From Magallana gigas (taxonomy: Eukaryota), in NCBI RefSeq assembly GCF_963853765.1, contig NC_088855.1, forward strand, positions 21,700,001-21,764,000: a DNA stretch of 64,000 bases. Reading direction: 5' to 3'. Numbering within the stretch: the stretch's first letter is position 1; the number at the start of each line of letters is the position of its first letter. The translations under genes were made by a program, and so were the position numbers. The notes below the pieces were generated by a model. The model saw only the letters and a list, made by a program, of their open reading frames with translations. It was not told where the DNA came from and made no database searches. Positions 34,167 to 37,679 of this stretch are shown here, one piece after another.

Positions 34167-36652
34167 ATGTCATGTTTTCATCTATCAACATTTTTATTCA
34201 AGTTTTAAATTTTCAAAAAGTGCAATATGTTGTATTTTACCTTCATAAACGTTGCTCATTTTTCACGTGAAAAATTGTCAAGAATACTGTAAGCATATTG
34301 ATGCTCACGACAAAATGTACTGTATTGACATAGTTTGATAATTTATAATCGGGAGAAATTCGATTATTTTGTACCGTTTACTATTGTGTCGTTCGCTGTG
34401 TATTAAGTTTTTAAATGATAAGTTCAGGTCTGTTCATGACATAGCAATCAGTTGGATCAAATTAAAGAACGAGGAATGTCACGAAAGGGTGGGCACATAT
34501 CTCCCTTTGTTGTCTCCATCTGGGCTTGATCAAGATCATAACAATACGGGCGAGGCTCCCAGCCGTTAGCTCAGAGATATCAAGTTCTGTAGAAGGGATC
34601 GTTTGTTTCGCCGCTATGTAACATCGGAACTCTCCAGTGGAAAGTACTATCCAATTGATGTGGAAAATGTCACAAAATAATGCACATGTCATATTTGGTG
34701 CAAAATGTTAACTTTGGTGGTTATCTTGAATATGCTACTATTTTGTACGTAGCGGCTAAGTTTGGGAATCGTGCTTCGTAACCGCTGCGAAGTTGATTAT
34801 AGCCGTGGTACTTAGACGGAATTGTAAAAGGCTACCAAGGATATCGGCCAATGCACGGATGTGCCCTGTTTCAAGAATCTGACGGGAGAGTTCCTCCCTC
34901 GACTGTTTCTCATTCGCGAACCCTAGCATTTACCAATGTCGCTCCAATTTAGTAGCAAAACTAGTATAATTTTGTTACTCGACAAACGGGTGCAATATCA
35001 ATGTCAAGAACGACCTTACTCCCAAATCACGGAAATTATAAGGATTTGTATCTTTATCAGTTAATTTTTTGATATTGCAGAAAAATGTTACTTTTATATA
35101 TCTGTAACATTAAAGAAGCACCAATAGGTTTACATACTGAAAAAATAAATGAGAGAACATTGGATTTTTGTAGAATTTATTAAAAAACATGCATTAACAA
35201 ACATATACTTCATGCAAAAAGTACGTAAAGGGAAAAAAAAATATTAATAATGAAAAAAAGATAAATAGGGCGTGCAGGTTTGTAAAAGAAAAAAAAAGAC
35301 TACTATGTTGTGTGCATTATATGCCTAATTGCTCGTCGTGTGTATCTTTTGGAAAAAAGGGTCCAGTATTAATTCAAAATGGCTAAGACTGAGACAGTGG
35401 CTTGGTGAGATTGTTAAAACTTGAAGAATAACTACTGGAAAGGCACTCATTACTCAGAAAATATATCTGCCATGTGTATATGTCTGTGTCATGGGGCCTC
35501 AGGCGGCTTATAATGCTCAAAACTGCTTATCTATCAGCTTACTTAATGAAAATGTGTATTGCTGAGACAATGTCTATATACCTCATTTTGCATACTAATG
35601 TGCCTATTATCTAGCTCTAATAGAGAAAACGAAAGGTAATGCTAAGGTAAATGAGGTATCATATTCTCTTCTAGTGGCTAATTAAAACTCGTATACATGT
35701 ATATATTGAGACAATATCTTTCAGTTGTACAGAGCGTTAAACTACGAGTACTGCACCAGAGTAATGTGAGGCAGGTTTTCAAGTAAAAGAAGTCTACGGA
35801 AACATTGCATGCAATGGTTAAAAAATCAATCCTATGGATGAGACAAGACGCAGTATCCCAAACAGTGGTACAGTTGTCAAATAGACAGTGAATGGAAATT
35901 GTCTGAGCTGGCACACAAATGTCTGAGATTTTGTCTAACTCGTCGAGCTGTCTCAGAAAGCCAAACACCGTGGCCCACGTGTTCCTGACAGAGACATCTA
36001 ATTTCAATGCTTCAGATACCAAATGTGCGGGAAATTGTCAAACAACTGAAACTGTCTGAGCTGGGACATCGAGCTGTCCCAAAAAGACGAACAGAGTGGT
36101 ACAAGTGTTTCCTGACATGCGATTTTAATGCTTCAGATATCAAATGTCCCGGATATTGTCTCACTCGCTGATTTACACACCCAGAAAGCCTGCAAACTAC
36201 GTAATGTAAATGTCCCTGACACGGACATGCAATGTCTGCAGTGGACCCAGTCCACCTCAAAGATAGTTACACACGGTTGGTCATTTAAACATAAGCTTGT
36301 TGATTTCCTTAGAAGCTACCAAAACCATGCATTGGTACAGTGTCCTTTAGTTCCTTGCCAAATGTCACCTATAAACCCTGTAAAAAGAACATTTTTTTAT
36401 TTCATTCGACTGCAATTCTAACAATTTTAGTTCGCCGCAAAAAAAATAGATTTTTTTTTTAGGTATAAACCACTTTATTTTTATCATTTTATTAACAAAA
36501 TTATTTAGCTGAACGTAAGTGTACACAATCGAACAGTATTATATAATTGCTATAATATACCAGAGAGCCGTTTGATTATATGTATAGGATGCCATTATTA
36601 TATCAATAAATTTTACTGATTTTGATACATACCTACAAGTTCCTGGCCCCTT

Positions 36653-37679
36653 TCAGTAGACGTAGAAGGACTTATTTAGGTCCTCAGTCTGCGCGTGTCT
36701 CTTTGGGAATTTGTGCTTCCTGGGTTGAGGGATGTCATGACGGCGAAGAGGGCGGTGCTTGAAGTTTGTACGAGCCAGCCATTCGATCTGTAATCCACAT
36801 AGATATTCATTAGTACATATATAAACTTTGTGGAATTATGATTTTAAAAATTTCGGTATGCAATGGGGTGTTCACTGACCGTGTGGGTGGGTTGCGGGAT
36901 GGTGGGCAACTCCCGCCGATCATCTGATCTGTTGATGGCACCAGTCAGGCGGTACTGCAATATACAAAATCAAACTTTAAAAATGTGATATAAAAAGCTG
37001 TCATAGTTTTCATTTAGCACTGCAATATGATTTTATTGTTCTAGTGTCAAACTCTGATGATTGCAGTTTACAAGTTAGCATTCTATTCTTAACGTCCCAT
37101 TCGTATAACTTAAGAGGGGAGGATGGTCGTGCTCATTTAAGAATACATTTGTAAATCTCCTTTAGAAGGAGAGCTTTGAATAAAGATAATAGTAAAATAT
37201 TTAAATAAAATCACGATGTTATCTTCTTTACGAAAAAGCAGTTTTTTACTTCAAAACTACTTAGTGATATAGATCTTAATGTTTAGAATAGATCTAATGG
37301 ATAATTTGCTGACCAACCAGCCTTCTTCGTCACAAGATTGTGTGAACCCAGGGTAGCCATGATGTATCTTACCCAGTCATTCATATGCTCTTTCCATCCG
37401 TGACGGAATGAAGCAAATGATAGCTGTTGCTATAGATACAATAATAGATAATAAGAAAATGTAAGAGAGAGGGAGAGAGAGAGGAGAGAGAGAGAGAGGG
37501 GGGGGAGATATGCAGAGACAGCGATGGGAGTCTTGGTAAATGAGAAAGTAAATGAAAGGCAATGAAAATGAGAAAGTAAAATTTCAGAGAGAGAGAGATA
37601 AACTTACGCTAGACTTCATATGAAGCTCCAGCAACACCTCGTACCACTGACACTCATTTGTTGAGGCCTCTATACAGCG
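36653..37679 (-). CDS. Unidentified small basic protein, spliced from phase-0 exons (5' end unresolved)
   Basis: Exons 37679-37608 (72 nt), 37423-37373 (51 nt), 36954-36880 (75 nt) and 36787-36653 (stop; the exon continues to a donor after 36633). All have canonical AG/GT sites and one open frame: RCIEASTNECQWYEVLLELHMKSS-LSFASFRHGWKEHMNDW-YRLTGAINRSDDRRELPTIPQPTHT-IEWLARTNFKHRPLRRHDIPQPRKHKFPKRHAQTEDLNKSFYVY*. Confidence 0.7.

What the first reader, a model, noticed from the sequence alone, without database searches (positions are those of the whole stretch)
36633..37679. Hidden orphan gene built from short symmetric phase-0 exons
Seen: four exons with canonical splice sites (72, 51, 75 and 155 nt) join in one open frame of 110 codons, and every internal junction is phase 0. 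None of this appears in the ORF track. The peptide is basic and rich in Arg, His and Pro, with an internal repeat RR-x(2-4)-IPQP (RRELPTIPQP and RRHDIPQP). The visible part has no TM segment or signal peptide. Inference: the 72, 51 and 75 nt exons can be skipped without a frameshift, which is a modular microexon-gene design. This could be a lineage-restricted protein or a small ciliary/sperm microtubule-associated protein. An in-frame ATG (MKSS...) would give a 90-aa product.
Basis: partly seen in the sequence, partly recalled or inferred. Interest (0 to 1): 0.75.

Follow-up and report, generated by a model that had tools for sequence, protein, structure and literature searches.

The report
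Annotated small oyster-only nuclear-type gene
The exons are real, but they are most of an already annotated Pacific oyster gene for a small basic protein of unknown function, one of about 13 copies of a family seen only in oysters, so it is neither hidden nor an orphan.

Summary
The four minus-strand exons exist as described, with AG/GT borders, phase 0 and 110 open codons. They are not a stand-alone gene. A conserved first coding exon lies upstream (ATG at 38447, 17 codons). Exon 2 starts 6 nt earlier in the annotated model (37429, 57 nt). Exon 4 splices on to a 3'UTR exon at 36376.

The spliced 129-aa product is identical to RefSeq XP_065934974.1, and the form without exon 2 (110 aa) is identical to XP_065934975.1. 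Both are named "uncharacterized protein [Magallana gigas]". RNA shows the exon 3-4 and exon 4-5 junctions of this copy.

The genome holds at least 13 loci with the same exon plan. Relatives were found only in Crassostrea/Magallana, Saccostrea and Ostrea, all unnamed. dN/dS against the nearest paralogue is 0.24. Pfam, PDB, fold and Atlas searches found nothing.

The protein is basic (pI 9.9) and mostly disordered. It has an NLS-like N-terminus and an invariant R-x-L-P-x-[IV]-P motif. Only exon 2 is a documented cassette. The microexon design, the MKSS start and a ciliary role are not supported. The gene is already annotated and its function is unknown.

The parts
38448..38600 (-). Promoter-proximal and 5'UTR block shared by paralogues. 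It holds TGACGT-type motifs, and a TATATA in the distant copies. The transcription start was not mapped.
   Evidence: The alignment of six paralogous loci has long invariant runs here, more conserved than the coding exons. Raw RNA reads cover the bin 38361-38560, all with the first mate on +, but they carry 3 differences from the window, so they may come from an allele or a paralogue.
38397..38447 (-). Coding part of the first exon (E0): ATG plus 16 codons (MKRERSDSRKHESESKR), followed by the donor GTACTG, phase 0.
   Evidence: Script. It is conserved, with synonymous changes, in the paralogues and in all full-length family proteins. An RNA-derived protein of a paralogue joins this exon to E1 (P0108).
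37608..37679 (-). Exon E1, 72 nt, phase 0 to 0. It encodes the first predicted helix (QWYEVLLELH).
   Evidence: It is conserved in the paralogues. Transcript contigs L017 and L018 of the closest paralogue or an orthologue use the same borders. No junction read of the window copy itself was listed.
37373..37429 (-). Exon E2, a 57-nt cassette exon of 19 codons.
   Evidence: The 57-nt form gives the exact RefSeq X1 protein, and skipping it gives the exact X2 protein. The leading QQ/QK/CK residues are conserved in paralogues and orthologues. One raw read lies in this bin.
36880..36954 (-). Exon E3, 75 nt. It encodes the invariant RRELPT[IV]PQPTH core.
   Evidence: The joint 36787/36880 is seen in one X3 contig and one X21 raw read. 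There are 13 genomic matches, all open.
36633..36787 (-). Exon E4, 155 nt. It has 44 codons, the stop TGA at 36655-36653, then 20 nt of 3'UTR before a used donor.
   Evidence: An X3 contig matches 36632-36787 with 0 differences and carries both joints. There are 16 genomic matches.
35361..36376 (-). Exon E5, 3'UTR only. Its start at 36376 is shown; its end near 35361 is inferred.
   Evidence: The joint 36376/36632 has CT..AC ends, which is GT..AG on the minus strand. X3 contigs cover 35361-36058 with about 5% differences. The paralogue transcript L017 has a 3'UTR exon of about 800 nt at the matching place.

Best explanation
This is the 3' four-fifths of a six-exon gene of Magallana (Crassostrea) gigas on the minus strand, five of whose exons are coding. 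RefSeq already annotates it as an uncharacterized protein with two isoforms: 129 aa, and 110 aa without the 57-nt exon 2. It is one of about 13 paralogous loci of a family found so far only in oysters (Ostreidae). Shown: the gene structure, its transcription and splicing, its identity to the RefSeq products, the family, and purifying selection. Inferred, at roughly 0.3-0.35 confidence: the product is a small, basic, largely disordered nuclear protein. It would be imported through the N-terminal basic-serine stretch (KR..11..KRR, like a bipartite NLS). It would act as an adaptor or regulator through conserved short motifs: a short helix pair, an invariant R-x-L-P-x-[IV]-P stretch that fits the class I SH3-ligand pattern, the EWLAR..F.HR block, and a C-terminal SF-x-V-Y. 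The cassette exon supplies the first half of the second helix, so skipping it would change that helical unit and leave the motifs intact.
For: The window is G000:C3:21700001-21764000, and the contig sizes equal those of the NCBI M. gigas records. The spliced translation is identical to P0059 (XP_065934974.1), and the E2-skipped form to P0060 (XP_065934975.1). The E3-E4 and E4-E5 joints appear in RNA, with a contig identical to this copy over E4. There are 13-16 paralogous exon matches with the same exon order. dN/dS is 0.24, and exons are 95% against introns 73-84% identical to the copy at C3:19.10 Mb. Homologues occur only in Crassostrea/Magallana, Saccostrea and Ostrea, and most loci have paired isoforms with and without E2. 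The protein has pI 9.9, GRAVY -1.34 and no hydrophobic stretch; the NLS-like pattern occurs in 28 of 30 members, R.LP.[IV]P in 29 of 30 and the C-terminal motif in 29 of 30. AlphaFold gives helices at 29-41, 49-69 and 85-92 with the rest at low confidence.
Against: No experiment or named homologue bears on function. Pfam, PDB sequences, Foldseek and the Atlas all gave nothing. The structure model is weak (pLDDT 58.9). The NLS and SH3-ligand readings are pattern matches only. Expression of this copy is low, at about 1x in 1.9 Gb of one polyA run. The E0-E1, E1-E2 and E2-E3 joints of this copy were not seen in my reads; they rest on the RefSeq model, on homology and on paralogue transcripts. Restriction to oysters rests on protein databases. 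No other bivalve genome could be searched at the DNA level.
Confidence: 0.85

Rival explanations
1. This is a stand-alone orphan gene made of just these four exons, starting at the in-frame ATG (MKSS) and giving a product of about 90 aa.
For: Exon 1 holds an in-frame ATG. Transcripts of the closest paralogue or an orthologue enter exon 1 from alternative upstream exons, with a stop codon just before exon 1, so their longest ORF starts at MKSS (L018; P0001).
Against: Exon 1 begins at an acceptor. The upstream MKRERS exon is conserved in frame in all paralogues and orthologues and is spliced to exon 1 in RNA of a paralogue (P0108). The frame before MKSS in exon 1 is strongly conserved at the protein level. 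The gene is not an orphan.
Confidence: 0.05
2. It is a small ciliary or sperm microtubule-associated protein.
For: Only general features fit: it is small, basic and proline-containing. No tool result supports it.
Against: No Pfam family matched, including the ciliary inner-protein families present in Pfam. No fold match was found. Conserved ciliary proteins are widespread in animals, whereas this family was found only in oysters. The N-terminal KR/S-rich stretch looks like a nuclear import signal rather than a microtubule repeat.
Confidence: 0.03
3. It is a non-functional duplicate (pseudogene) or a repeat-derived transcribed fragment whose open frame is retained only because the duplication is recent.
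For: It belongs to a segmental duplication with the C3:19.10 Mb locus. A young 1.14-kb repeat sits about 250 nt upstream of its ATG. Expression is low. A degenerate partial copy lies 157 kb away (L004).
Against: dN/dS is 0.24 at dS 0.136, with 10 synonymous against 10 non-synonymous changes over 80 and 307 sites. All splice sites and the frame are intact. The transcript of this very copy is correctly spliced. Distant paralogues at 50-70% identity keep the same frame and exon plan.
Confidence: 0.05

Closest known systems
RefSeq XP_065934974.1 (isoform X1, 129 aa) and XP_065934975.1 (isoform X2, 110 aa), 'uncharacterized protein [Magallana gigas]'
   Same: They are identical residue for residue to the window's spliced translations with and without exon 2.
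   Different: Nothing differs. This is the same gene. The RefSeq entries carry no function.
Paralogue LOC105329583 at C3:19.10 Mb (XP_034336730/XP_034336731; P0026, P0032), and the other 11 or so M. gigas loci
   Same: The exon plan, the phases and the cassette exon are the same. Protein identity is 91-93% for the nearest copy and 50-70% for the others. The conserved 5' block is shared.
   Different: The distant copies carry one or two extra [VI]PQQRKH units and a longer Ser/His stretch after the N-terminus. The window copy has a repeat insertion upstream that the nearest paralogue lacks.
Oyster orthologues: C. virginica LOC111133027 and at least 8 other loci, C. angulata, Saccostrea echinata and S. 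cucullata, Ostrea edulis LOC125671538
   Same: Protein identity is 60-93%. The invariant core is RRELPT[IV]PQPTH-x-[IM]EWLAR. Isoform pairs with and without the 19-20-residue cassette are annotated.
   Different: All are unnamed predictions. Copy numbers differ between species.
This comparison rests on my own knowledge of that family, not on a search.
   Same: The internal exons are symmetric (lengths are multiples of three), so skipping keeps the frame.
   Different: MEG exons are mostly 6-36 nt, there are many per gene, and the products are secreted with a signal peptide. Here the exons are 51-155 nt, only one is a documented cassette, and there is no signal peptide.

Membership tests
Oyster 'MKRERS...SF-x-V-Y' small basic protein family (unnamed; RefSeq 'uncharacterized protein', e.g. 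LOC105329583, LOC111133027) | Full-length sequence similarity to the annotated members | tested here: met
   The window product equals P0059. It is 93% identical to P0026 and P0058, about 80% to C. virginica and about 60% to Saccostrea. The profile E-values reach 1e-68.
Oyster 'MKRERS...SF-x-V-Y' small basic protein family | Five coding exons, all in phase 0, with a cassette exon of 57-60 nt in second internal position | tested here: met
   Script. The same exon order is seen in the paralogues, and isoform pairs are listed.
Oyster 'MKRERS...SF-x-V-Y' small basic protein family | Invariant motifs: N-terminal MKR.RS..KR, the RRELPT[IV]PQPTH / EWLAR core, and a C-terminal SF.VY | tested here: met
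   Invariant columns are listed. The pattern counts are 28-29 of 30 members.
Micro-exon gene (MEG) design | Most of the coding sequence is built from very short exons (about 36 nt or less) | tested here: not met
   The coding exon lengths are 51, 72, 57, 75 and 135 nt.
Micro-exon gene (MEG) design | Symmetric exons that can be skipped in frame, with several of them used as cassettes | tested here: inconclusive
   All internal exons are multiples of 3. Only exon 2 skipping is documented.
Micro-exon gene (MEG) design | A secreted product with an N-terminal signal peptide | tested here: not met
   The N-terminus is highly charged (MKRERSDSRK). The highest 19-residue Kyte-Doolittle mean is 0.23.
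Orphan gene (no paralogue, no homologue) | Absence of related sequences in the same genome and in other genomes | tested here: not met
   There are 13-16 paralogous loci, and homologues occur in five other oyster species.
Ciliary or sperm microtubule inner / associated proteins | A match to a described ciliary protein family or fold | tested here: not met
   No Pfam match was found for 20 members, and no PDB fold or sequence match. Localisation cannot be tested with these tools.

The most novel reading that the evidence does not exclude
The family could be a truly Ostreidae-born set of small nuclear, intrinsically disordered regulators. Their 5'UTR and promoter block is kept more constant than the coding sequence across about 13 dispersed copies. 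A conserved cassette exon would switch a helical unit on and off. That would make it a lineage-specific regulatory module, for example for stress, immunity or development, with no counterpart outside oysters.
Probability: 0.25. Interest if true: 0.45.

Novelty: already known. Interest (0 to 1): 0.22.

Why it matters
The gene itself adds nothing new, because RefSeq already holds its exact products. What remains open is the family. It is an oyster-restricted, multi-copy set of small basic proteins under purifying selection. Its alternative exon is conserved across Crassostrea, Saccostrea and Ostrea, and its 5' block is unusually conserved. No function, domain or paper is attached to it. That makes it a modest lead for work on lineage-specific genes in oysters, not a surprise for a specialist.

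Tried and rejected
- Pfam on single exons, on three family proteins and on 20 aligned members: no family. The only rows were RRM_PARP14_1 and VSG_B at E of 0.1 or worse.
- Profile search of PDB sequences: only a designed repeat protein at E 0.034.
- AlphaFold2 with a 20-row alignment gave pLDDT 58.9. Foldseek against the PDB found nothing below E 5. Further fold libraries were not tried because the model is too weak.
- ESM Atlas by features: best score 0.76, which is chance level.
- Exhaustive phmmer with exon 4 (44 aa) against 1.84 billion representatives: 7 hits. Six look like oyster fragments and the seventh is a repeat protein that is not a relative.
- Paper searches for 12 LOC/XP/UniProt identifiers and two SRA run ids: no paper.
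- Rfam over 35300-41400: only sub-threshold hairpin hits inside the repeat.
- The look-up of encoding contigs for P0059: no record, because records of the window's own genome may be left out.
- I looked by eye for an RFX X-box in the conserved 5' block, which a ciliary gene might have. No inverted GTTRCY..RGYAAC pair is present.
- PIP-box, RVxF, 4E-binding and LIR patterns were considered for the conserved motifs and rejected because the spacing does not fit. This was inspection, not a tool result.
- The search of earlier findings by words returned nothing.

Full report
**Observation.** The blocks are 37679-37608, 37423-37373, 36954-36880 and 36787-36633. Each is preceded by AG and followed by GT. 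Joined, they give 110 open codons ending at TGA 36655-36653, and all junctions are phase 0. The window has no N. The description is therefore accurate.

**RNA evidence.** I searched for runs with the last coding exon. I then laid three Logan contig sets and one raw polyA RNA run on 34561-40560. That range was chosen to avoid the 37-bp tandem array found.
- The joint 36787/36880 (exon 3 to exon 4) is present in one X3 contig and one X21 raw read.
- The same X3 contig matches 36632-36787 with no difference and then jumps from 36632 to 36376, with GT..AG ends on the minus strand.
- Exon 4 is therefore an internal exon. The stop lies 20 nt before the last junction, and a 3'UTR exon follows.
- All X21 reads on exons 2-4 have the first mate on +. 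That fits a minus-strand RNA if the library is of the usual stranded kind, but I could not calibrate this.
- Depth is about 1x, so expression in these samples is low.
- The joints of exon 1-2 and exon 2-3 were not listed.

**The rest of the gene.** Exon 1 begins at an acceptor, so I looked upstream.
- Searching the window's own genome with exon 4 gave 16 matches, all open, on C2, C3, C7, C8 and C9. Exon 3 gave 13.
- tBLASTn and tBLASTx of the fetched paralogous loci showed the same four exons in the same order at every locus. They also showed one more conserved block at about 38600-38350.
- That block contains an ATG at 38447, 17 codons (MKRERSDSRKHESESKR) and a GTACTG donor in phase 0.
- An exhaustive phmmer search with exon 4 found P0005, a 126-aa Saccostrea protein with this same N-terminus.

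**Identity.**
- Word-indexed searches with P0005 and with a family alignment returned only oyster proteins, all named 'uncharacterized protein'. They came from Saccostrea echinata and S. cucullata, Crassostrea virginica, C. angulata, Ostrea edulis and Magallana gigas.
- The contig lengths attached to the M. gigas hits (61,039,741; 53,672,946; 61,469,542; 51,133,819) equal those of G000. The window is therefore M. gigas chromosome C3, positions 21.70-21.76 Mb.
- Cluster look-up gave P0059 (XP_065934974.1, isoform X1, 129 aa) and P0060 (XP_065934975.1, isoform X2, 110 aa).
- A script showed that E0+E1+E2(37429-37373)+E3+E4 translates exactly to P0059, and that the same without E2 translates exactly to P0060.
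- The annotated exon 2 is thus 57 nt, not 51. The two acceptors are tandem (tatAG CAACAG). The two extra residues (QQ here; QK or CK elsewhere) are conserved across the family.
- The gene is not hidden in the public annotation. It is invisible to an ORF list only because no exon exceeds 51 codons.

**Selection and family.**
- Against the nearest paralogue (C3:19.10 Mb, LOC105329583) the five coding exons are 95% identical and the introns 73-84%. NG86 gives dS 0.136, dN 0.033 and ω 0.24.
- Cluster listings show many loci per species. Most have paired isoforms that differ by the 19-20-residue cassette: at least 9 loci in C. virginica, and many in both Saccostrea species.
- Transcript contigs of the closest paralogue or an orthologue (L017, L018) skip exon 2 and carry a 3'UTR exon of about 800 nt. 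They enter exon 1 from alternative upstream exons.
- RefSeq isoforms with other N-termini exist too (P0033, P0093).
- An RNA-derived protein (P0108) joins the MKRERS exon to exon 1 in a paralogue.
- So exon 1's acceptor is served by more than one promoter.

**What the protein looks like.**
- It has 129 aa, 15.8 kDa, pI 9.9 and GRAVY -1.34. It has 26 K+R, 9 H and 7 P, and no hydrophobic stretch.
- AlphaFold2 with 20 family rows gives a weak model (pLDDT 58.9). It has three helices (29-41, 49-69, 85-92), and both tails are below 50.
- Exon 2 encodes residues 42-60. That is the loop and the first half of helix 2.
- The invariant features of the family are: the N-terminal KR-(11)-KRR basic/serine stretch; W29-Y30 in helix 1; the core L-T-x-A-I-N-x-S-x-x-R-R-E-L-P-T-[IV]-P-Q-P-T-H followed by E-W-L-A-R-x-x-F-x-H-R; a [VI]-P-x-[QP]-R-[KR]-H unit present once to three times; and the C-terminal S-F-x-V-Y.
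Its first copy is the invariant core and its second is the variable unit.
- R-E-L-P-T-I-P fits the textbook class I SH3-ligand pattern (+xΦPxΦP). This is my own reading of the sequence, not a tool result.

**Function.** Nothing known matches. Pfam, PDB sequences, Foldseek on the PDB, the ESM Atlas, Rfam and paper searches for the identifiers were all blank. My best guess is a small disordered nuclear adaptor whose helical unit is modulated by the cassette exon. I give it about 0.3-0.35. It rests on sequence patterns only. There is no support for a ciliary or sperm role, and none for a microexon-gene architecture.

**Context.** The gene lies tail to tail with a plus-strand gene whose last recognisable exon weakly matches STN1_2 at 34005-34148. 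A 3β-HSD-family gene lies on the minus strand at about 30053-32305. A 1.14-kb interspersed repeat sits at 38704-39840, just upstream of the conserved 5' block. It is absent from the nearest paralogue.

**Verdict.** It is wrong on 'hidden', 'orphan', 'microexon design' and the start codon. The gene is already annotated, and the family remains uncharacterised. Interest is low to modest.

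Noticed in passing
window 38704-39840: A 1.14-kb interspersed repeat. The genome holds at least 40 scored copies at 96-100% identity, out of 969 first-look candidates. One end carries a 71-nt, 97% complementary hairpin (39680-39750 / 39769-39839). RNA depth is very high on both strands. It is absent from the nearest paralogous locus, so it is a young insertion about 250 nt upstream of the gene's ATG. It was not classified.
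   Followed up: partly
window 40563-41273: A tandem array of a 37-bp unit with 19 copies at 88% match. A related array lies at the matching place upstream of the paralogue at C3:19.10 Mb (L009 about 5800-6600). The duplication that made the two gene copies therefore spanned at least 5 kb.
   Followed up: partly
window 38448-38600, and the paralogous loci L009, L011, L013-L015: The 5'UTR and promoter block is more conserved among paralogues than the coding exons are. It has long invariant runs such as GTTACCGCGTTAGTTACTGA and GATCGGTGGCA. TGACGT-type motifs lie upstream. A TATATA box is present in the distant copies but not in the window copy. Its function is unknown.
   Followed up: partly
G000:C3:21893316-21893590 (L004), 157 kb from the finding and outside the window: A partial copy of exons 3 and 4 on the plus strand. 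Exon 4 is split between two frames, and no exon 1 or 2 was found in the 3 kb fetched. It is probably a decayed copy.
   Followed up: no
L018:1-303 against the paralogue locus (L009, gene-oriented 1846-1976 and 3642-3815): Transcripts of the paralogue or an orthologue start at exons 5-7 kb upstream and splice into exon 1, bypassing the MKRERS exon. A stop codon lies just before exon 1 in these transcripts. Whether the window copy has such exons was not tested.
   Followed up: no
window 34005-34148, + strand: A weak match to the C-terminal part of Pfam STN1_2 (22.9 bits, below the cut-off). If real, it places the end of an STN1-like gene about 1.2 kb from the inferred end of this gene's 3'UTR exon, in convergent orientation.
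   Followed up: partly
window 30053-32305, - strand: Exons of a 3-beta-HSD / NAD-epimerase family gene (Pfam 3Beta_HSD, E 6.6e-17 and 1.4e-7).
   Followed up: partly
window 41874-41960, + strand: An ATG-initiated open frame rich in R and G (MSDQDRGDRGRRRPRRRGGG...), followed by a GT. It may be the first exon of a plus-strand gene in a slightly GC-richer stretch. It was not identified.
   Followed up: no
window 37973-38133: Raw reads show a joint 37990/38113 in 14 reads, and loose ends made of C runs at 37973 and 38133. Both lie next to two G-rich homopolymer tracts. This may be a small repeat or a library artefact.
   Followed up: no
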